A stretch of DNA of 64,000 bases from positions 62,001 through 126,000 of the IMG/VR virus record IMGVR_UViG_3300025869_002060. One strand, 5' to 3'. A program made the translations under genes and the position numbers. Below are positions 34,199 to 44,377 of the stretch, one piece after another. Numbering within the stretch: the stretch's first letter is position 1; each line of letters starts with the position of its first letter. The notes beneath the pieces were generated by a model. That model made no database searches and was not told where the DNA came from. It saw only the letters and a program-made list of their open reading frames with translations.

Positions 34199-34491
34199 AG
34201 TCCAGAAAAGTCTTACCTATTCTGATAGTAGCAATGCTAACAGGATGTGCTGGGCCACTGGAAATAGTAAATACCATAGGCTATTTCTTTGTGGATGGAG
34301 TTACAGAAGCCCAAACAGGAAAAGGGGTTATTGATAACGCAGTTAGCACGGTAGTTGGCAAAGACTGTAAAGTTAAAAACGTATTTAAGTCAAAGGAAAA
34401 ACTCTGCATAGAGCAAAAAACAAATAAAAACCATGGAGAGGTTAATGGAGATAAAGACAATCAACGAAGCAATAGATCTATTGAAAGATAA
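34195..34491 (+). CDS. Lipoprotein
   Basis: MKSRKVLPILIVAMLTG-C lipobox; GGAGG SD. Confidence 0.75.
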   Translation: MKSRKVLPILIVAMLTGCAGPLEIVNTIGYFFVDGVTEAQTGKGVIDNAVSTVVGKDCKVKNVFKSKEKLCIEQKTNKNHGEVNGDKDNQRSNRSIER

Positions 34492-35233
34492 AGACTGGGA
34501 TAATGAATTATGGTGTGATGCACTATTTGCACAAATTTCTCGTATTTCATATTTAGATGGTAAACCAGCTAAGAAAATATTCAAACAACTAGGATTTATT
34601 AAACATAAATTTATTGAAAATGATGGAGCACAAGCACATATCATCGAAGATGAATCCAATTTGGTTTTTGCATTCCGCGGAACTGAACCAACACAATTTA
34701 ATGATATAGCCGCTGACCTTAAAGCATGGAAAATGAAGAGTCGTACTGCTGGAAGAGTACATGATGGATTTTTTGATGAAACAAACAAGTTATGGCCAAT
34801 GATTGAAAACTATCCAATTAATAAAAAGAAAATTTGGATTTGTGGGCATAGCCTTGGCGGTGCAATGGCAACGATATGTGCAACACGTTTATGTTTAGCG
34901 TCGCCGATGTTATACACATATGGATCTCCGCGTGTGGGAGATAGAAGATGGTTAAAAAACAATAACAGTATTAATCATCATAGATTTGTTAATAACAATG
35001 ACATAGTTCCTAAAGTACCTTTAGCAATGATGGGATTCAAACACCAAGGATTACAATGTTACATCAATTATTATGGTAATATACGACATCCAACTTTTTG
35101 GCAAAAAACCAAAGATCAATTTAGAGCTAGACGAAGAGCATGGAGTAAAGGAAAGCCGTTCAGCGGTTTTACTGATCACAGTATCAGTCGATATTCACAA
35201 AAACTCTTAGATTTATATTTAAGTTCTGATTAA
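34433..35233 (+). CDS. Class 3 lipase
   Basis: AFRGTE, VHDGF, GHSLGGAMA, YTYGSPRVG, NNDIVP.VP, DH. Confidence 0.93.
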   Translation: MERLMEIKTINEAIDLLKDKDWDNELWCDALFAQISRISYLDGKPAKKIFKQLGFIKHKFIENDGAQAHIIEDESNLVFAFRGTEPTQFNDIAADLKAWKMKSRTAGRVHDGFFDETNKLWPMIENYPINKKKIWICGHSLGGAMATICATRLCLASPMLYTYGSPRVGDRRWLKNNNSINHHRFVNNNDIVPKVPLAMMGFKHQGLQCYINYYGNIRHPTFWQKTKDQFRARRRAWSKGKPFSGFTDHSISRYSQKLLDLYLSSD

Positions 35234-35994: not shown

Positions 35995-36231
35995 ATGAAA
36001 AAGATCTCAGACAATTTCCACAACGAACTATGGGTAGGTATGAATGCCGCCCTAGCCAGAACAGAGAACTATTATAGTGATGGTGCTGTTAATTGGAGTT
36101 ATGTAGATGCAGATGTGTATATGCATATGGCTAAACAGTATGATGTAAGGACTAGCAATAGCCTTAATGACAAGTATAGGAATCTATTTGAAGCGGCATG
36201 TGATACGATAGATGAGGGTATGGCAATATGA
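35995..36231 (+). CDS. Hypothetical protein
   Basis: Start MKKISD after GGAG; NWSYVDADVY motif. Confidence 0.65.
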   Translation: MKKISDNFHNELWVGMNAALARTENYYSDGAVNWSYVDADVYMHMAKQYDVRTSNSLNDKYRNLFEAACDTIDEGMAI

Positions 36232-36749
36232 AAGAAAATGAAGTTAAACCGTTGGCTCTAAGAGCCTTACAGTTTGCCACTGAAGCACATGCATCAATTG
36301 GGCAGAAACGAAAGTATAGTGGGGAAGACTATATAGTACACCCCATCGAAGTTTCTGGACTAGTTAAAAAGTATGGCGGATCTGCTGAAATGCAGGCCGC
36401 GGCTCTGTTGCATGATACAGTAGAAGATACTCCTGTTACCATTGGTGATATTAACAGTGAGTTTGGTCCTGTTGTGGCCAAATTGGTTGCTGATCTAACT
36501 GACATCAGTAAACCTGAAGATGGTAATCGTAAACTACGTAAATCCATGGATAGAGACCATACTGCTAATGCTAGTAGAGATGCTCAGATCATCAAGTTGG
36601 CTGATTTAGTCAGCAACACGGTAAGTATCAAGGCGGAAGACCCTAATTTTTGGAAAGTATACAAAGTAGAGAAAATTGCTTTGCTTGATGTTATGACCAA
36701 AGTTACAGATCATCCGTTGTACAAAATAGCATTGGAGCAAATCAAATGA
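36228..36749 (+). CDS. HD-domain (p)ppGpp hydrolase-like protein (small alarmone hydrolase/Mesh1 type)
   Basis: FATEAH..GQKRK.SGEDYIVHP.EV, AALLHDTVEDT, LTD, IIKLAD..SN. Confidence 0.88.
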   Translation: MKENEVKPLALRALQFATEAHASIGQKRKYSGEDYIVHPIEVSGLVKKYGGSAEMQAAALLHDTVEDTPVTIGDINSEFGPVVAKLVADLTDISKPEDGNRKLRKSMDRDHTANASRDAQIIKLADLVSNTVSIKAEDPNFWKVYKVEKIALLDVMTKVTDHPLYKIALEQIK

Positions 36750-37515: not shown

Positions 37516-37584
37516 AAAAAAATGGTTGACAAAATGGGCATACTATAGTATATTATGGTTATGCTAAGAGAAAGAGGTTTGAAG

Positions 37585-37716
37585 ATGAAGAGTTTTATTT
37601 TAGTATTTGGGTGTTTATTCATGCTTAATGCATGTGGAACAGTTGGAGGCGCAATTGATGGCGCGGGCGACGATCTAAAGCAGGCAGGAAAATGGGTAAA
37701 GCAAGTAGGAAAATAA
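37585..37716 (+). CDS. Entericidin EcnA/B-like small lipoprotein (43 aa, not in ORF track)
   Basis: MKSFILVFGCLFMLNA-CGTVGGAIDGAGDDLKQAGKWVKQVGK; GAGG SD; TTGACA promoter at ~37526. Confidence 0.65.
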   Translation: MKSFILVFGCLFMLNACGTVGGAIDGAGDDLKQAGKWVKQVGK

Positions 37717-37739
37717 TTTACTGGATAAGGAGAGTTTTC

Positions 37740-37898
37740 ATGATGAAATTTATTATGGGAGTAGTAGTTGGTATCGCATTATCTACATGGGGTATTGAAG
37801 GATCTACCGCAATGGTGAAAAAAGGTATTGGCCTTGTGCAAGATGGAGCACAAACAGTACAAAGCACTATCACTTCATCTAAAGGCCTAAAAGACTAA
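37740..37898 (+). CDS. Small membrane-anchored protein
   Basis: AAGGAG SD; MMKFIMGVVVGIALSTWG hydrophobic N-terminus. Confidence 0.65.
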   Translation: MMKFIMGVVVGIALSTWGIEGSTAMVKKGIGLVQDGAQTVQSTITSSKGLKD

Positions 37899-38375: not shown

Positions 38376-38391
38376 ATACTCCTGCATTGGG

Positions 38392-38420
38392 AGAAAAGGA
38401 CCTTCGGGTCCTTTTCTTTT
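38392..38420 (+). terminator. Intrinsic terminator with C(UUCG)G tetraloop
   Basis: AGAAAAGGACC-TTCG-GGTCCTTTTCT-TTT. Confidence 0.92.
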
Positions 38421-38452
38421 GAGTGTCGTGTCAATAGGCATTAAATAGCAGT

Positions 38453-39760
38453 ATGTTAGAACTACTGTTAATTGGTATACTAGGACTAGTTGTTGGAATG
38501 GCACTAGGACTGTTTAGTGTTTTTCCTATATATTTTGCAGGCTTTGTTGTGTATGCATTACACACGGCTTGGACACCTGAGTTGTTATTGGTGTTTTGGG
38601 CTACAGCCGCTATTGGAAGTCAGTTCTTTGGAAGTGTTAGTACAATCACACTGGGTATACCTGGAGAAGCAAGTGCCTTAGTATGGATCAAAGACCTCAA
38701 AGGCATGAGTTTACAAGAACGAAACTATTTGCTATACCATACTGCTAAAGGTAGTTTGTTTGCAGGATTAATAGCTCTAGGTGTTGTGTGGTTAGCCTAT
38801 CATTGGGTAAGTGCTTACAGTTACTTTCTATCAAGCGTCAATTTTGTATTAGCAATGTTCCTGTTGGTTATTGCACTATTTGCATTTACCGATCGTAAAC
38901 CTTTAATAGCAATTGGTTTGTTATGTTTGGGTACGTTCTTAGGCCCTGTTAATAACTTTGCATTGCCACCCTGGTGGTATCATGTGCAACTTTGGTTTGA
39001 AAATACCAGCTTCTTTATGCTTATTGCAAGTATGATGTTGATACCAGATCTAATAATGGACAGAGCTAACTTTAAACATATAAAAACAGATCATTTTGAA
39101 CCCAGTGATAACGACGAACGAACATGGTGGACTATATCTAAGAGTACCGTTATTGGTTTATTCAGCGGATTGGTACCAGGACCAGCGGCTGAAACTGCTA
39201 GTGCATTGGCATACCATGCTCACAAAAAGAAAGGTAGATTCCATCAGATTGTTGGTGCCGAAACTGCTAACAATCCCGGAGTGGTAATGATGTTACTTCC
39301 TTTCTTTGCAATGGGTTTACCAATTACTGCTAGTGCTTTGATTATATCAACAGTACTAGATGTTAAGAACGTCGATCCTGTAGAATTTGTAGCAAGTGCA
39401 TCATCAGTCATTCCAAGTTTCAGTGTATTTGATGTTATCATAATGGTAGCTTCAATTGCTACAGTATTTTATTATCTACTCAGCACTCGCTTTATTGATC
39501 TGTACGTAAACATTGTAAAATTCTTATACAGTAAGAGTGCTTACTTGTTGGTCATTATTGTGTTTGCAATGATAATAGCAGATATGAGTGTCAACGAAAC
39601 GCCAGTCTGGCTTTACTCAATCTTACTACTTTTTTTTACCGTCGGCGGTATCTTGCTTAAATACTTCAGTATTAATCCTATCCTGTTTATATTTGGAACA
39701 ATGTTCGGCGATAAACTAATTTGGACACTCATGCAGTTTACATCAATAAACTTTTCATAA
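38453..39760 (+). CDS. Tripartite tricarboxylate transporter permease TctA-like
   Basis: About 12 TM segments, FFGSVSTITLGIPGEAS, GLVPG, GAETANN, LPFFAMGLPITAS. Confidence 0.8.
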   Translation: MLELLLIGILGLVVGMALGLFSVFPIYFAGFVVYALHTAWTPELLLVFWATAAIGSQFFGSVSTITLGIPGEASALVWIKDLKGMSLQERNYLLYHTAKGSLFAGLIALGVVWLAYHWVSAYSYFLSSVNFVLAMFLLVIALFAFTDRKPLIAIGLLCLGTFLGPVNNFALPPWWYHVQLWFENTSFFMLIASMMLIPDLIMDRANFKHIKTDHFEPSDNDERTWWTISKSTVIGLFSGLVPGPAAETASALAYHAHKKKGRFHQIVGAETANNPGVVMMLLPFFAMGLPITASALIISTVLDVKNVDPVEFVASASSVIPSFSVFDVIIMVASIATVFYYLLSTRFIDLYVNIVKFLYSKSAYLLVIIVFAMIIADMSVNETPVWLYSILLLFFTVGGILLKYFSINPILFIFGTMFGDKLIWTLMQFTSINFS

Positions 39761-39788
39761 ACATCAAAAATTTAAGGAGTAAAATCTT

Positions 39789-40706
39789 ATGAAAAAAATA
39801 CTACTTTTAACTTTGGCCGGCTTGGCTTCTTTGGTTGTCACTGCAACCTCTGCAACCGCCAAAGACACTATCACTGTAGTCAATCCTAGCAACAAAGCTA
39901 GTCCAGCAACAGTATTTGCTAAGAGTTACGAACAAGCTCTAAGAGACGCACAATCAGACTATAACGTTGAATTTTATCAGGCATCAAGTTGTGCAGATGC
40001 TGACAAGAAGTATAAATCAACTGATAATGCCGTAATGGTATTTAATGCAGACGTTCGTATTGCTAGTATGGCAAAAGGCGTTGGTTGTGATTTTTCTGCA
40101 AGTGCCAAAAACACAACATTAATCACGAAGAGCTATTTGAAGTTTTGTCGTGCTCCTGGATCAACAAAGGAATTTGGTACAGAAAATACTACAGTAGGTA
40201 TTGCTAGTGTTATTCTAAGTAAAGGTTTATTTGATGATTTAAACGGTGGAGTTAGAAAACTTAAAGGTGTTCCTTACTCAGGTTCAAAGACAGTGTTAGC
40301 GGCAGTACTTGCTGGTGATATTGACTATGGAATTATTGGCGCAGGTGTTGTTAATTCACCATTGAAGGCCGGTAAGATTGAATGTGTTTATGATTACGAT
40401 CCAAGTGCGCCTAACTTTATTGGTGCAACTTTAAAGGAACTACAAGTTCCAACATTACCTATTATCCAAATGATTCATCATAACGGTGATAGTGCAATGG
40501 GTAAAGCCGTAGCAAAAGCAGGAACAAATAAAAAGTTCTTAGACGGTATTGCATTTAATGGATTTAGTGATACTAAGAATGCAGGTGTGAACGCAGATGA
40601 TGTAACTGTCGTTGATAACCACATTGTTAACGTATACGAAAACTACTGGAAAGCCGATGGCGAAGAAGGTGGTATTTGGAGTACAATCAAAGGTTGGTTT
40701 AACTAA
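39789..40706 (+). CDS. TctC/Bug-like periplasmic solute-binding protein
   Basis: Sec signal peptide; VPYSGSKTVLAAVLAGDID matches TctC VPYKG...ALLGGEVD; adjacent to tctA-like gene. Confidence 0.7.
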   Translation: MKKILLLTLAGLASLVVTATSATAKDTITVVNPSNKASPATVFAKSYEQALRDAQSDYNVEFYQASSCADADKKYKSTDNAVMVFNADVRIASMAKGVGCDFSASAKNTTLITKSYLKFCRAPGSTKEFGTENTTVGIASVILSKGLFDDLNGGVRKLKGVPYSGSKTVLAAVLAGDIDYGIIGAGVVNSPLKAGKIECVYDYDPSAPNFIGATLKELQVPTLPIIQMIHHNGDSAMGKAVAKAGTNKKFLDGIAFNGFSDTKNAGVNADDVTVVDNHIVNVYENYWKADGEEGGIWSTIKGWFN

Positions 40707-40726
40707 GCAACCAAAACAAACCCATT

Positions 40727-40761
40727 AAAAAAGCCCGGTTTTTATACCGGGCTTTTTCTTT
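40727..40761. terminator. Bidirectional intrinsic terminator
   Basis: AAAAAAGCCCGGT-loop-ACCGGGCTTTTT between convergent genes. Confidence 0.9.
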
Positions 40762-40782
40762 GACTTAAAAATTAAGTAAAAA

Positions 40783-41736
40783 TTACTTAGCTTCTAAAAT
40801 CTGACCTACTAAGTCTTGGCTGAAATAACCATCAAACTGGTCATAAACTGTAGAAGTTGCGTCTTTAAATTCTGCAACTGCTTCAGGTGTCCATTCGATA
40901 ACTTTAATGCCTTCTTCAATAGCACGACTTTTAGCGGCCGCACCGTCGATTAATGACTCTTCTCTTTCAGCTACTGCGGCAATCTTTGCACATTCAGTAA
41001 TAACAGCCTGTTGTTCGGCTGTTAGGCTATTCCAAATCTTGTCTGAAATAACAATGCTTGTTAAGAATAAAGCATGTTCAGTATCTGCAACTGTATCAGT
41101 GACAGTGTTGACAGCAGAACGGAAGTAACGTGGGAACACGTTCTCGCCGCCTTCACACTCGCCAGATGCAACTGACTGTGCAAAACCATCAACGCCCATT
41201 GGTACTGTGTTAACACCAACTGCTTTGAAAGTAGCTTCTGAAACTGGGCTTGTACCACATCTCATTGTTGTACCAGCAAAGTCTGCAATACTATGAACTT
41301 CGTCATTAGTAGCAATCATTTTGAATCCACCACTGTATGTGAACGCAAGTCCACGTGCGCCGGAAGTATCAGCTAGTCCGTCTAGTAGGTAGTGTCCTAC
41401 TGGTCCGTCTAGTACACGAGCGGCATGATCGTGATTTTCAAAGATGAAAGGCATATCGAGTGAATAGTAGTCTTCATTTAAAAGACCAAGAACAGTACTA
41501 TAAGTTTGGCTCATAGAAACTTCACCTTGCTCTAGCTTCTTTAGAAGAGCACGGTTTCCAATTTCTTCACCGTTATTGTACTTGTCTTGCCATTCGTTTT
41601 TACCTAGGACTTCAACTTCAATTGCTCCATCAGTTTTTTCACTTACTGCCTTACTGAAAGCTTCAGCTGAGCGAAGGAAAAGATCGTATGGAACATGAGC
41701 TAAGACCCAAGTAAGTTTTAGGGTATCTTTGTTCAT
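40783..41736 (-). CDS. TRAP transporter DctP-like solute-binding protein lacking a signal peptide
   Basis: FSKAVSEKTDGAIEVEV, LDMPFIFENHDHA.RVLDGPVG, DFAGTTMR, GGEN, IWNSLTAEQQ; AAGGAG SD 10 nt before ATG 41736. Confidence 0.85.
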   Translation of the reverse strand: MNKDTLKLTWVLAHVPYDLFLRSAEAFSKAVSEKTDGAIEVEVLGKNEWQDKYNNGEEIGNRALLKKLEQGEVSMSQTYSTVLGLLNEDYYSLDMPFIFENHDHAARVLDGPVGHYLLDGLADTSGARGLAFTYSGGFKMIATNDEVHSIADFAGTTMRCGTSPVSEATFKAVGVNTVPMGVDGFAQSVASGECEGGENVFPRYFRSAVNTVTDTVADTEHALFLTSIVISDKIWNSLTAEQQAVITECAKIAAVAEREESLIDGAAAKSRAIEEGIKVIEWTPEAVAEFKDATSTVYDQFDGYFSQDLVGQILEAK

Positions 41737-41920
41737 TTTATACATTCTCCTTATATATGCATATATTTTAGCTTTACATCTATTCAACAAAAAAATTTAC
41801 TAGTATATATCTTTGTTGGGGGAATCTACAACGGGTTGGTTGTAAAGTATAAGATTTCTGCTAATGTTATTTATGCTGTCTAGGAAATCTAGTCAACATA
41901 TCTTCTAGTTTACTACCTTA

Positions 41921-42397
41921 TTATTCAGGTAGAAAAAACGGGTCAGCTTGTTTTGCGGCATCAGTATAATCCACTGCGACACTTTTAACTTCTAGTGTAG
42001 TATTATCATGTAACTTAGTTACTAATGCATCACTGTCATCAAGAATTTCAATTTTAGTTCTGATGTCGTTAGCAATATGATAAGCATTGATTGTACTCAT
42101 GTTACCGTGTGTAACAAAAACTCTACTGAATGTAGTTGCATCTGCTTCAGATCCAAAACCGTCCCACATAATTGTGAGTTGTTTTTTACCATTCTCAAGT
42201 GTAGTAACAGTACCTGTGTCTACTTTTTGAGGTGAAGTTTCAGCATTCTCATTATTATCCATGGATTCGATCAATGCTCTATTTCGATCCCATTGTTGCT
42301 CCTTGATAGCATTCAGTGAAGCATCATCAGTCTTTTTTTGCACAAAGTCTGCTTCGTTATCTGCTACGTATGAGAAGCGAATTTTAAAATTGGCCAT
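41921..42397 (-). CDS. Hypothetical late protein
   Basis: AAGGAG SD; TAAATA upstream on the minus strand (~42446-42451). Confidence 0.7.
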   Translation of the reverse strand: MANFKIRFSYVADNEADFVQKKTDDASLNAIKEQQWDRNRALIESMDNNENAETSPQKVDTGTVTTLENGKKQLTIMWDGFGSEADATTFSRVFVTHGNMSTINAYHIANDIRTKIEILDDSDALVTKLHDNTTLEVKSVAVDYTDAAKQADPFFLPE

Positions 42398-43069: not shown

Positions 43070-44377
43070 ATGAAGCCGTGGGAAGTAATTAGCAAACTTG
43101 AAAGTGACAATAGCAGACTAGCCAAAGAGGCTATTGTTTTACAGGAAGCCCAAGAAGGTAACGATGCATTTTTTAATGGTGCTAAACTAGCACTTGACAG
43201 TATGGTAACATTTGGAATAAAACAAGTTCCAGAAGCAACCAAGTCTGGTGCTGGATTACAGCCTGAAACATTCTTTAAGTTTCTTAATCAATTTGCTGAC
43301 AGAGAAATAACAGGTAATGAGGCCATTGCTAATGTTAATTTTCTACGTATGAAAGCCACAGTAGATGAATGGAACAGTTGGTACAGACGTATTTTGATTA
43401 AAGATTTACGTTGTGGCGTTACTGAAAAAACCATTAACAACGTAGTTAAAAAAGAGTTTCCGCAATACGAGATTCCAGTATTTTCATGTCAACTAGCACA
43501 CGATGGTGCCAAGCACGAAAAGAAGATTGCAGGTACTAAAATGGTAGAAGTAAAGCTCGATGGTGTTCGAGTTATTACAATAGTATACCCAGATGGTAAT
43601 GTAAATCAGTATAGCCGTAACGGTAAAGAACTACACAACTTTGCACACATCAAAGAGCAATTTGCACAATCTGCAAAATTACTTTCACAGCCTACAGTGT
43701 TTGACGGCGAAGTTATGAGTGCTAACTTTCAGGATCTTATGAAGCAGATCCATAGAAAAGAAAATGCAGAAACTACAGATGCCGTACTACATTTGTTTGA
43801 TATCTTAACACTTGCTGAATTCAAAGCAGGCAAAAGCGAGCATAGACAGTTTGAAAGATCTCAAACATTGCATAATTGGCATAAACATCTTGAAGGAATG
43901 ATGCCTAATGTTGTTGTATGTGGTTTTGCTACTATAAACCTTGATTCTGATGATGGTATGGAAGCATTTAAGATAATTAATAATGATGCCATTGCTAAAG
44001 GGTACGAAGGGATTATGATTAAAGATCCAATGGCAATATACGAAACAAAACGTACTCATTCATGGCTAAAACAAAAACCTTATATTGAGGTAACATTGGA
44101 GGTAAAGGATGTCGAAGAAGGCACAGGACGTAACGAAGGAAAACTTGGAGCTCTTGTCTGTGAAGGAGAAGATGACGGACAAGTTATTTCAGTTAACGTT
44201 GGCAGTGGACTCACAGATACTAATCGCGATGATTTTTGGAGTTCTCGTGATAAGTTGCCTGGTCAGCTTGTAGAAGTTAGAGCTGACGCAATTACACAAA
44301 ACCAAGATGGCACATATAGTCTAAGGTTCCCTCGTTTCTTAAGGTTCCGTGGCTTTAGTGTTGGAGAAAAAATTTAA
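43070..44377 (+). CDS. ATP-dependent DNA ligase
   Basis: EVKLDGVR (KxDG), FDGEV, LFD, EGIMIKDP, WLKQK, VGSGL, SLRFPRF. Confidence 0.95.
   Translation: MKPWEVISKLESDNSRLAKEAIVLQEAQEGNDAFFNGAKLALDSMVTFGIKQVPEATKSGAGLQPETFFKFLNQFADREITGNEAIANVNFLRMKATVDEWNSWYRRILIKDLRCGVTEKTINNVVKKEFPQYEIPVFSCQLAHDGAKHEKKIAGTKMVEVKLDGVRVITIVYPDGNVNQYSRNGKELHNFAHIKEQFAQSAKLLSQPTVFDGEVMSANFQDLMKQIHRKENAETTDAVLHLFDILTLAEFKAGKSEHRQFERSQTLHNWHKHLEGMMPNVVVCGFATINLDSDDGMEAFKIINNDAIAKGYEGIMIKDPMAIYETKRTHSWLKQKPYIEVTLEVKDVEEGTGRNEGKLGALVCEGEDDGQVISVNVGSGLTDTNRDDFWSSRDKLPGQLVEVRADAITQNQDGTYSLRFPRFLRFRGFSVGEKI

What the first reader, a model, noticed from the sequence alone, without database searches (positions are those of the whole stretch)
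38453..41736. Late-expressed hybrid transport locus: TctA plus TctC converging on a TRAP DctP with no signal peptide
Seen: a TctA-like permease and a secreted TctC-like binding protein (no TctB) share a bidirectional terminator with a DctP-like gene (no DctQ/M in the window). The DctP starts directly at the mature fold (MNKDTLKLTWVLAH), with no Sec, Tat or lipoprotein signal even in the upstream in-frame extension. It keeps an Arg at the carboxylate-binding position (GTTMR). Both units have TAAATA promoters. Inference: the phage imports a carboxylate through a two-component TTT, while the DctP was repurposed as a cytoplasmic or virion ligand sponge or sensor.
Basis: partly seen in the sequence, partly recalled or inferred. 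Interest (0 to 1): 0.66.

Follow-up and report, generated by a model that had tools for sequence, protein, structure and literature searches.

The report
Phage DctP binding protein without export signal
An uncultured jumbo phage carries a TctB-less TctA/TctC-type uptake pair beside a DctP-type binding protein that belongs to a large, conserved clade which lost its export signal once. This clade is never found next to TRAP membrane genes and often sits beside an asparagine-synthetase-like enzyme, so it most likely binds a carboxylate inside the cell.

Summary
TctA (38453-39760), a secreted SBP with a TctC/Bug fold (39789-40706) and a DctP (40783-41736, minus strand) converge on a strong bidirectional terminator. 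DctP has no Sec, Tat or lipoprotein signal and keeps the canonical Arg.

This is not a truncated copy. More than 100 metagenomic clusters and 80 of 80 viral loci start 4-10 residues before the first strand. On a tree they form one well-supported signal-less clade nested among signal-bearing Bdellovibrionota homologues.

"No DctQM" holds only for the window. The same 228-kb record has a full dctQ-dctM-dctP(signal) operon, a second TctA/TctC pair and a second signal-less DctP. The signal-less clade is still TRAP-independent: DctQ/M were found in 0 of 135 loci and in 0 of 3 near-complete relative genomes.

Its recurrent neighbour is an AsnB-like PP-loop enzyme, seen in 42 of 100 signal-less loci against 0 of 35 signal-bearing loci. 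In some phages this enzyme, TctA, the TctC-like SBP and DctP lie in tight tandem.

Best reading: a cytoplasmic carboxylate-binding protein working downstream of uptake and alongside a carboxylate-adenylating enzyme. The sponge, sensor and virion roles and late timing remain untested. The ligand is unknown.

The parts
38391..38421 (+). Intrinsic terminator closing the upstream 158-aa gene. It marks the 5' boundary of the TctA-SBP transcription unit.
   Evidence: The hairpin folds at -20.4 kcal/mol and is followed by a U-run; z = -4.0.
38442..38447 (+). TAAATA motif 5 nt upstream of the TctA ATG. There is no Shine-Dalgarno sequence between them. It is a possible phage promoter element, which would give a nearly leaderless mRNA.
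   Evidence: The sequence was read directly. The motif occurs upstream of 48 of 282 genes against about 7 expected, including several tail-fibre genes. The spacing here is atypical.
38453..39760 (+). TctA-family permease (435 aa, about 9-10 hydrophobic segments). It is the large membrane subunit of a TTT-type transporter, and no TctB accompanies it.
   Evidence: Pfam TctA at 4e-35 over profile positions 1-422 of 423. Hydrophobic segments were counted. dN/dS is 0.08 against the L019 ortholog. No TctB is found in the record.
39789..40706 (+). Secreted solute-binding protein with a TctC/Bug fold (305 aa). It has a Sec signal peptide, with predicted cleavage after ...SATA.
   Evidence: There is no Pfam hit. 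The AF2 model has pLDDT 90, and its top Foldseek PDB hits are all TctC/Bug proteins with E from 1e-12 to 1e-10. The conserved VPYSGSK...AGDID segment lies where the paralog's weak Pfam TctC match falls. Four Cys are invariant. dN/dS is 0.13.
40728..40757 (.). Bidirectional intrinsic terminator shared by the converging TctA-SBP and DctP units.
   Evidence: A 12-bp stem flanked by an A-run and a T-run. It folds at -19.9 kcal/mol on the + strand and -21.2 on the - strand; 0 of 200 shuffles fold as well.
40783..41736 (-). Signal-less DctP-family binding protein (317 aa from the ATG at 41736, which follows an AAGGAG Shine-Dalgarno sequence). It belongs to a conserved clade that is predicted to be cytoplasmic and is independent of TRAP membrane subunits.
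   Evidence: Pfam DctP at 8.7e-49. The N-terminus was analysed. The clade is described. R159 is invariant in the clade. dN/dS is 0.12.
41868..41873 (-). TAAATA motif (within CATAAATA) about 130 nt upstream of the DctP start, in the gap after the upstream 158-aa gene. It is a candidate promoter element only.
   Evidence: The 8-mer itself is not enriched in the window (2 found against 6 expected).
41921..42397 (-). 158-aa ORF of unknown function upstream of DctP on the same strand. Together with DctP it forms a small minus-strand island in a mostly plus-strand genome.
   Evidence: No Pfam or PHROG hit. It is syntenic, at 36% identity, in relative L019. It has its own TAAATA 48 nt upstream.

Best explanation
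DctP1 is a cytoplasmic, high-affinity carboxylate-binding protein. It derives from a periplasmic DctP-type SBP through one ancient loss of the signal peptide.

In this phage, the adjacent TctB-less TctA permease and its secreted TctC-like receptor bring a carboxylate across the host inner membrane. DctP1 then captures that compound in the cytoplasm. This would either act as a thermodynamic sink for uptake or hold and present the compound to an AsnB-like PP-loop enzyme that adenylates and amidates carboxylates. That enzyme is encoded elsewhere in the genome, next to the second TctA/TctC pair.

Shown: the gene identities, the folds, the absence of a signal, the monophyly of the clade, its independence from DctQM, the gene-neighbourhood links and purifying selection.

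Inferred: the cytoplasmic location, carboxylate binding, the direction of transport and any hand-off to the enzyme.
For: 1. No signal, with an internal control. DctP1 and its paralog DctP2 lack any hydrophobic N-region. DctP3, SBP1 and SBP2 of the same genome carry clear Sec signals.

2. The trait is conserved. 118 of the 120 listed homologues in the homologue search and 80 of 80 IMG/VR loci begin 4-10 residues before the WVLAH strand. dN/dS is 0.12.

3. A single loss. One clade of 40 representatives (SH-aLRT 99) contains only signal-less proteins. It is nested among signal-bearing Bdellovibrionota homologues.

4. The pocket is retained. R159 is present in 100% of the clade, and the core motifs are shared with the signal-bearing relatives.

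5. Not a TRAP subunit.
- No DctQ or DctM lies within the flanks of 135 loci.
- None is found in three 94-100% complete relative genomes.
- Four of five Bdellovibrionota genomes that carry the subfamily have no DctM at all.
- DctP1 is under 25% identical to the DctP3 that sits beside DctQM.

6. Partner enzyme.
- A family with an invariant SGGxDS motif lies within the flank of 42 of 100 signal-less loci, and within 1.5 kb in 36 of them. It lies near 0 of 35 signal-bearing loci.
- It is present in 12 of 12 relative records.
- Its model's best structural matches are asparagine synthetase B (Z 11.4), beta-lactam synthetase, TsnB9 and carbapenam synthetase, all of which adenylate carboxylates.

7. 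Tight tandem modules occur in distant phages. The order is PP-loop, TctA, SBP, DctP in L088 and L091, and PP-loop, DctP, TctA, SBP in L041.

8. In Bdellovibrionota contigs the signal-less DctP sits with BKACE, an SDR dehydrogenase, acyl-CoA-synthetase-like enzymes and the PP-loop enzyme. These are cytoplasmic carboxylate-metabolising genes.
Against: - No localisation, ligand or expression data exist.
- SignalP was not available, so signal calls rest on hydropathy and inspection.
- In the window's own lineage the PP-loop gene is not adjacent; it lies about 80 kb away.
- More than half of the signal-less loci show no PP-loop gene within 7 kb.
- The complex prediction for the PP-loop enzyme with DctP1 gave no verdict.
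- The loci are not independent samples, so the Fisher p-values are only indicative.
- The three near-complete relatives lack TctA, so uptake through TTT is not required for the clade's function.
Confidence: 0.5

Rival explanations
1. DctP1 is a pure sequestration sponge. It soaks up a host metabolite or signalling molecule in the cytoplasm, for example to blunt a defence or starvation signal, with no onward enzymatic use.
For: The protein is signal-less, strongly conserved and keeps its pocket Arg. The genome carries two paralogs. More than half of the loci have no obvious enzyme partner nearby. Sponge proteins are an established phage strategy (general knowledge).
Against: The same clade sits in bacterial metabolic clusters with BKACE, SDR and CoA-ligase genes. 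It recurs beside a transporter and an adenylating enzyme, not beside recognisable anti-defence genes. No defence-related match was sought or found.
Confidence: 0.15
2. DctP1 is a DctP-fold protein that has become an enzyme or an enzyme subunit, as the SBP-fold proteins Thi5 and MqnD have, rather than a passive binder.
For: Many polar residues are invariant: H14, R22, H102, H104, R107, E198, R203, H221, E257 and R258. The protein is predicted to be cytoplasmic and is consistently paired with an enzyme gene.
Against: Most of these invariant residues are shared with the signal-bearing, presumably periplasmic relatives, and they match general DctP motifs. Nothing points to a catalytic site.
Confidence: 0.1
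3. DctP1 still works outside the cytoplasm as a TRAP receptor. It would use the phage's own DctQM (about 80 kb away) or the host's, and reach the periplasm by a non-classical route or late in infection when the membrane becomes leaky.
For: The genome encodes an intact DctQ and DctM. The fold and the Arg of a TRAP SBP are retained.
Against: The whole clade lacks signals, while the same genome uses Sec signals on three other SBPs. DctQM already has its own adjacent DctP3. The clade is never next to DctQM, and it occurs in complete phage genomes and bacterial genomes that have no DctM.
Confidence: 0.07
4. DctP1 is a virion-packaged or injected protein.
For: Only a TAAATA motif upstream. Several tail-fibre genes carry the same motif.
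Against: There is no similarity to structural proteins. The motif spacing is atypical. Bacterial chromosomal homologues sit in metabolic clusters.
Confidence: 0.03

Closest known systems
DctP-type TRAP transporter solute-binding proteins (Pfam PF03480; e.g. SiaP, DctP)
   Same: The family match is full length. The Venus-flytrap sequence motifs are present, and the carboxylate-selecting Arg is conserved. R159 aligns with the Arg of solved DctPs; its correspondence to SiaP R147 comes from my own knowledge together with PMC4646407.
   Different: The clade has no export signal anywhere. It is never encoded next to DctQ or DctM. It occurs in genomes with no DctM. Its recurring neighbour is an AsnB-like enzyme. 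It falls below the TIGR00787 dctP cut-off (124.7 against 175 bits).
Tripartite tricarboxylate transporters (TctABC; Bug/TctC receptors)
   Same: There is a full-length TctA domain. The secreted receptor has a TctC/Bug fold and sits immediately downstream in the same transcription unit.
   Different: There is no TctB, and the compact operons of relatives leave no room for one. TctA alone is otherwise known mainly from archaea (PMC5812351). The receptor is too divergent for Pfam TctC. The system is phage-encoded and paired with a DctP-family protein.
Phage-encoded solute-binding proteins that plug into host transporters (cyanophage PstS; from my own knowledge)
   Same: A phage carries an SBP as an auxiliary metabolic gene to increase nutrient acquisition during infection.
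   Different: Here the phage also brings its own membrane permeases, and the DctP copy in question lacks the export signal it would need to reach a transporter's outer face.
Asparagine synthetase B-like PP-loop synthetase domains (AsnB, beta-lactam synthetase, carbapenam synthetase, TsnB9)
   Same: The partner protein (genome 22262-23443) has an invariant SGGxDS PP-loop, and its best structural matches are these enzymes (Z 8.3-11.4).
   Different: It has no Pfam hit, about 6-11% identity and a distinct N-terminal region. Its substrate is unknown. It lies outside the window.

Membership tests
TRAP transporter SBP (DctP family) | Sequence match to the family model above the curated threshold | tested here: met
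   Pfam PF03480 scores 166.8 bits against a cut-off of 23.4. NCBIfam NF037995 scores 137.4 against 50. The stricter TIGR00787 is not reached: 124.7 against 175.
TRAP transporter SBP (DctP family) | Conserved arginine that binds the substrate carboxylate | tested here: met
   R159 aligns with the Arg of 4p47 and 4ovs. It is 100% conserved in the signal-less clade.
TRAP transporter SBP (DctP family) | Extracytoplasmic location through an N-terminal signal peptide or lipid anchor | tested here: not met
   There is no hydrophobic N-region, Tat motif or lipobox. The fold starts at about residue 6. The same holds in 80 of 80 viral loci. SignalP itself was not available.
TRAP transporter SBP (DctP family) | Encoded with, and working with, DctQ and DctM membrane subunits | tested here: not met
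   DctQ/M are found in 0 of 135 loci of the subfamily and in 0 of 3 near-complete relatives. Four of five Bdellovibrionota genomes have no DctM. The window's genome does have DctQM, but with its own distant DctP3. A functional interaction cannot be tested here.
Tripartite tricarboxylate transporter (TTT) | TctA large permease | tested here: met
   Pfam PF01970 at 4e-35 over the full-length profile.
Tripartite tricarboxylate transporter (TTT) | TctC/Bug periplasmic receptor | tested here: inconclusive
   There is no Pfam TctC hit for the window's SBP. The top ten structural matches are all TctC/Bug proteins, with TM 0.55-0.65. The paralog SBP2 and L012's SBP score 23-25 bits against a cut-off of 27. 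The signal peptide is present.
Tripartite tricarboxylate transporter (TTT) | TctB small 4-TM subunit | tested here: not met
   No PF07331 match at E <= 1 in the 228-kb record. No 4-TM small ORF flanks TctA. The gaps of 10-30 nt in the operons of L088 and L041 leave no room. TctB is poorly conserved, so a very divergent copy elsewhere cannot be excluded.
PP-loop ATP pyrophosphatase / AsnB-like synthetase (partner protein, outside the window) | SGGxDS PP-loop motif and AsnB-type synthetase fold | tested here: met
   S83, G84, G85, D87 and S88 are invariant in 20 sequences. VIA-align gives Z 11.4 to 1ct9, 9.8 to 1jgt and 8.3 to 1q15. The Foldseek hits are almost all PP-loop enzymes. The model's pLDDT is only 69.
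T4-type late promoter (TATAAATA) | Motif at a promoter-like distance upstream of late (structural) genes | tested here: inconclusive
   TAAATA is enriched 6.7-fold upstream of genes and precedes several tail-fibre genes, but also a ClpA-like ATPase. Its spacing at TctA (5 nt) and DctP (about 130 nt) is atypical. No transcript data are available.

The most novel reading that the evidence does not exclude
The signal-less DctP clade is a previously undescribed class of cytoplasmic solute-binding proteins. On this reading they act as substrate-capture or substrate-presentation partners for AsnB-like carboxylate-amidating enzymes. Jumbo phages and Bdellovibrionota share the clade, and some phages add a TctB-less TctA/TctC importer to feed it. 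This would be a periplasmic receptor fold re-used inside the cell as part of a phage-encoded metabolic module.
Probability: 0.3. Interest if true: 0.8.

Novelty: new variant of a known kind. Interest (0 to 1): 0.62.

Why it matters
DctP proteins are textbook extracytoplasmic receptors. A large, strongly constrained clade that has lost export and never accompanies DctQM would widen what this fold is known to do. It would also give a concrete case of a receptor re-used as an intracellular binding partner.

The finding also shows an uncultured group of jumbo phages carrying an unusually heavy transport load. This genome alone has a full TRAP system, two TctB-less TTT pairs, a YhhQ-like transporter, five desaturase paralogs and an AsnB-like enzyme. 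Together these point to a specific but unidentified carboxylate that these phages acquire and modify during infection.

The TctB-less pairs offer a natural minimal TTT system for mechanistic study.

The proteins are small and soluble, so ligand screening and structure determination are straightforward. The question is directly testable.

Tried and rejected
- Truncated or pseudogene copy: rejected. The whole clade shares the short N-terminus and dN/dS is 0.12.
- Recent duplicate of the phage's TRAP SBP: rejected. DctP1 and DctP3 are under 25% identical.
- Close cultured-phage relatives: none. Megablast of the locus found no match. The tblastn hits for DctP and TctA were short unannotated, metagenomic or bacterial-genome records at 21-26% identity. 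The ClpA-like ATPase is only about 41% identical to PA5oct-like and Phosso jumbo phages.
- 7-deazaguanine DNA-modification link. This was suggested by a YhhQ/Vut_1 transporter and by QueC-like Atlas neighbours of the PP-loop protein. No TGT/DpdA is present in the record, and the better structural match is AsnB-like rather than QueC. Not supported, though the record is only 65% complete.
- Complex prediction of the PP-loop enzyme with DctP1: no verdict, score 0.00. This is evidence neither for nor against binding.
- Profile search of the SBP family against PDB sequences: nothing useful.
- Literature searches for TRAP or TTT genes in phages and for cytoplasmic SBPs: no relevant paper in the held library.
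- The large representative-protein search was not needed.
Full report
**What is in the window**

- The first is a full-length TctA. Pfam gives 4e-35 over profile positions 1-422 of 423.
- The third is a DctP-family protein. Pfam gives 8.7e-49 and NCBIfam TRAP_S1 gives 137 bits.
- The middle protein has no Pfam match. An AlphaFold2 model built on 35 homologues (pLDDT 90) finds only TctC/Bug receptors among its best ten Foldseek PDB hits: 4x9t, Bug27, MatC, the terephthalate binders, BugD and TphC.
- That middle protein also has a classical Sec signal, four invariant cysteines and a conserved VPYSGSK...AGDID segment. That segment lies where its paralog gives a weak Pfam TctC match.

The two plus-strand genes are bounded by a terminator at 38391-38421 and by a 12-bp hairpin at 40728-40757. 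The hairpin folds equally well on both strands (-19.9 and -21.2 kcal/mol) and has U-runs on both sides.

**The DctP start**

An AAGGAG Shine-Dalgarno sequence precedes the ATG at 41736.

- From that start the protein has six residues before the first beta-strand.
- The only in-frame extension (a TTG, 18 residues) is basic and not hydrophobic.
- The highest 10-residue hydropathy in the first 35 residues is 1.29, with no twin-arginine motif and no lipobox.
- The same phage's other three binding proteins score 2.3-2.7 on the same measure and have obvious n-h-c signal peptides.

This internal control is the strongest single argument that the missing signal is genuine. SignalP was not available, so the calls rest on hydropathy and inspection.

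**The genome around the window**

The window is positions 62001-126000 of a 228,348-bp IMG/VR virus record that CheckV rates 65% complete. Tail-fibre and structural matches and a ClpA-like ATPase (about 41% identical to PA5oct-like jumbo phages) fit an uncultured jumbo phage.

Searching the whole record changed the picture. About 80 kb upstream lie, in order:
- dctQ, dctM and a dctP with a signal peptide (DctP3);
- a 393-aa ORF;
- a second TctA;
- a second secreted TctC-like protein.

A second signal-less DctP (DctP2) lies at 182 kb. No TctB was found anywhere in the record.

DctP1 and DctP2 are 38% identical. Both are under 25% identical to DctP3. So "no DctQM" is true of the window but not of the phage. 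Even so, DctP1 is not a recent copy of the phage's TRAP receptor.

**The signal-less state is a clade character**

- 118 of the 120 listed homologues in the homologue search begin a few residues before a conserved W-V-L-A-H strand. The other two are short fragments.
- So do all 80 IMG/VR loci retrieved with a family alignment.
- The family is highly constrained, with mean column identity of 61% and 43 invariant positions.
- The three genes of the locus have dN/dS of 0.08-0.13 against an 81%-identical ortholog.

A scan of one genome per prokaryote species found the same subfamily mainly in Bdellovibrionota and Elusimicrobiota MAGs. Many of these copies do have clear signal peptides.

On a maximum-likelihood tree, one branch with SH-aLRT 99 holds 40 representatives, and all of them are signal-less: 26 viral and 14 binned in MAGs. 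This clade is nested among signal-bearing Bdellovibrionota sequences. The simplest history is one loss of the signal followed by spread through jumbo phages and some bacteria.

It is present in only 62% of the nearest signal-bearing relatives.

**Not a TRAP subunit**

- No DctQ or DctM lies within 6-7 kb in any of 135 loci of the subfamily.
- Three 94-100% complete relative genomes (337-354 kb) have the signal-less DctP but no DctM and no TctA.
- Four of five Bdellovibrionota genomes that carry the subfamily have no DctM at all.

The phmmer screen for DctM used the phage protein as its query. That is a caveat, but DctM is well conserved.

**What it does travel with**

The 393-aa ORF between DctP3 and TctA2 has no Pfam hit. 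Its family has an invariant SGGxDS PP-loop. Its model (pLDDT 69) matches:
- almost only PP-loop ATP pyrophosphatases by Foldseek;
- most closely asparagine synthetase B (Z 11.4), beta-lactam synthetase, TsnB9 and carbapenam synthetase by VIA-align.

All of these adenylate a carboxylate and convert it to an amide-type product.

How often this family accompanies the DctP:
- It lies within the flank of 42 of 100 signal-less loci, and within 1.5 kb in 36 of them.
- It lies near none of the 35 signal-bearing loci. The loci are not independent, so the p-values are only indicative.
- It is present in all 12 larger relative records searched.

In distant phages the genes lie in tight same-strand tandems whose order varies:
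- PP-loop, TctA, SBP, DctP in L088 and L091;
- PP-loop, DctP, TctA, SBP in L041;
- PP-loop x2, DctP, TctC-like SBP, 2OG-oxygenase-like in L012.

In Pseudobdellovibrionaceae contigs the signal-less DctP sits with the PP-loop protein, a beta-keto-acid cleavage enzyme, an SDR dehydrogenase and two acyl-CoA-synthetase-like enzymes. This is a cytoplasmic carboxylate-metabolising context.

**Interpretation**

The evidence best fits a DctP fold that now works inside the cell as a carboxylate binder. It is coupled in many lineages to an AsnB-like adenylating enzyme. In the window's lineage it is coupled to a TctB-less TctA/TctC importer that would supply the compound from outside.

It is not settled whether the protein acts as a sink, a carrier to the enzyme, a plain sponge or something catalytic. 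The complex prediction for the enzyme with DctP1 returned no verdict. The ligand is unknown.

"Virion" and "sensor" have no support. "Late-expressed" rests on a TAAATA motif that is truly enriched upstream of genes (48 of 282 against about 7 expected) and precedes several tail-fibre genes. Here, however, it sits at unusual distances from the start codons. No transcript data could be obtained.

**Comparison with what is known**

By sequence, DctP1 is a member of Pfam DctP. It fails two defining functional features of TRAP receptors: export, and partnership with DctQM.

The TctA/SBP pair is TTT-like but lacks TctB. According to the review PMC5812351, TctB is poorly conserved and absent from archaeal TctA systems, and TctA has been proposed as the core transporter.

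I found no paper in the held library that describes TRAP or TTT genes in phages, or a cytoplasmic DctP clade. That is not proof of absence.

**Limits**

- The record is incomplete.
- MAG bins may contain misbinned phage contigs. L097 and L101 clearly look like phage fragments.
- Signal calls for bacterial homologues are heuristic, and two were corrected by eye.
- The tree used the quick search.
- The neighbourhood counts include near-duplicate loci.

Noticed in passing
Outside the window: genome 19066-22048 (L163:9066-12048): A complete, intact TRAP operon on a phage: dctQ (167 aa), dctM (459 aa) and a dctP with a Sec signal (363 aa). I found no report of this for phages in the held literature.
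   Followed up: partly
Outside the window: genome 12654-18375 (L163:2654-8375): A Vut_1/YhhQ-like transporter (the queuosine-precursor or vitamin uptake family) is followed by five tandem fatty-acid-desaturase-family paralogs (Pfam 2e-13 to 6e-18), just upstream of the TRAP operon. This is an unusual membrane and lipid gene island for a phage.
   Followed up: partly
Outside the window: genome 22262-25550 (L008:308-3596): An AsnB-like PP-loop protein (393 aa, SGGYDS) is followed by a second TctA (27% identical to the window's) and a second secreted TctC-like SBP (Pfam TctC 25 bits).
   Followed up: yes
Outside the window: genome 180890-183240 (L002:68-2418, minus strand): A second signal-less DctP paralog (322 aa, 38% identical to DctP1) is followed by a 336-aa ORF with no family match.
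   Followed up: partly
window 36228-36749 (+): A 173-aa HD_4/HD-domain protein. This domain type is found in RelA/SpoT (p)ppGpp hydrolases, so it is possibly a phage alarmone hydrolase.
   Followed up: no
window 34433-35233 (+) and 43070-44377 (+): A class-3 lipase-family protein (Pfam 1.4e-21) and an ATP-dependent DNA ligase (ligase domain plus OB domain) flank the region.
   Followed up: no
window 37555-37898 (+): Two small overlapping ORFs lie just upstream of the locus. One is 53 aa with a lipoprotein-like signal (…LNAC). The other is 68 aa with one hydrophobic segment. Both are conserved in relative L019 (58-60% identity).
   Followed up: partly
L102:5890-12391, L098:7884-10343 (Bdellovibrionota MAG contigs): Signal-bearing members of the same DctP subfamily have no DctQM nearby. 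They sit next to a membrane-anchored protein with a GDS motif (it looks SGNH/DltD-like; no family match), an MBOAT acyltransferase, AMP-binding enzymes and a NitT/TauT-type ABC transporter. These orphan receptors may serve something other than TRAP transport.
   Followed up: partly
L134:5890-12936 (Elusimicrobia MAG contig): Five DctP-subfamily paralogs are clustered within 7 kb, again with no DctQM in the flank.
   Followed up: no
L014:13746-15823 (relative phage, 337 kb): A thioredoxin-reductase-like flavoprotein and an AhpC/peroxiredoxin pair are inserted a few kb from the TctA-SBP-DctP locus in a 67%-identical relative. They are absent from the window.
   Followed up: no
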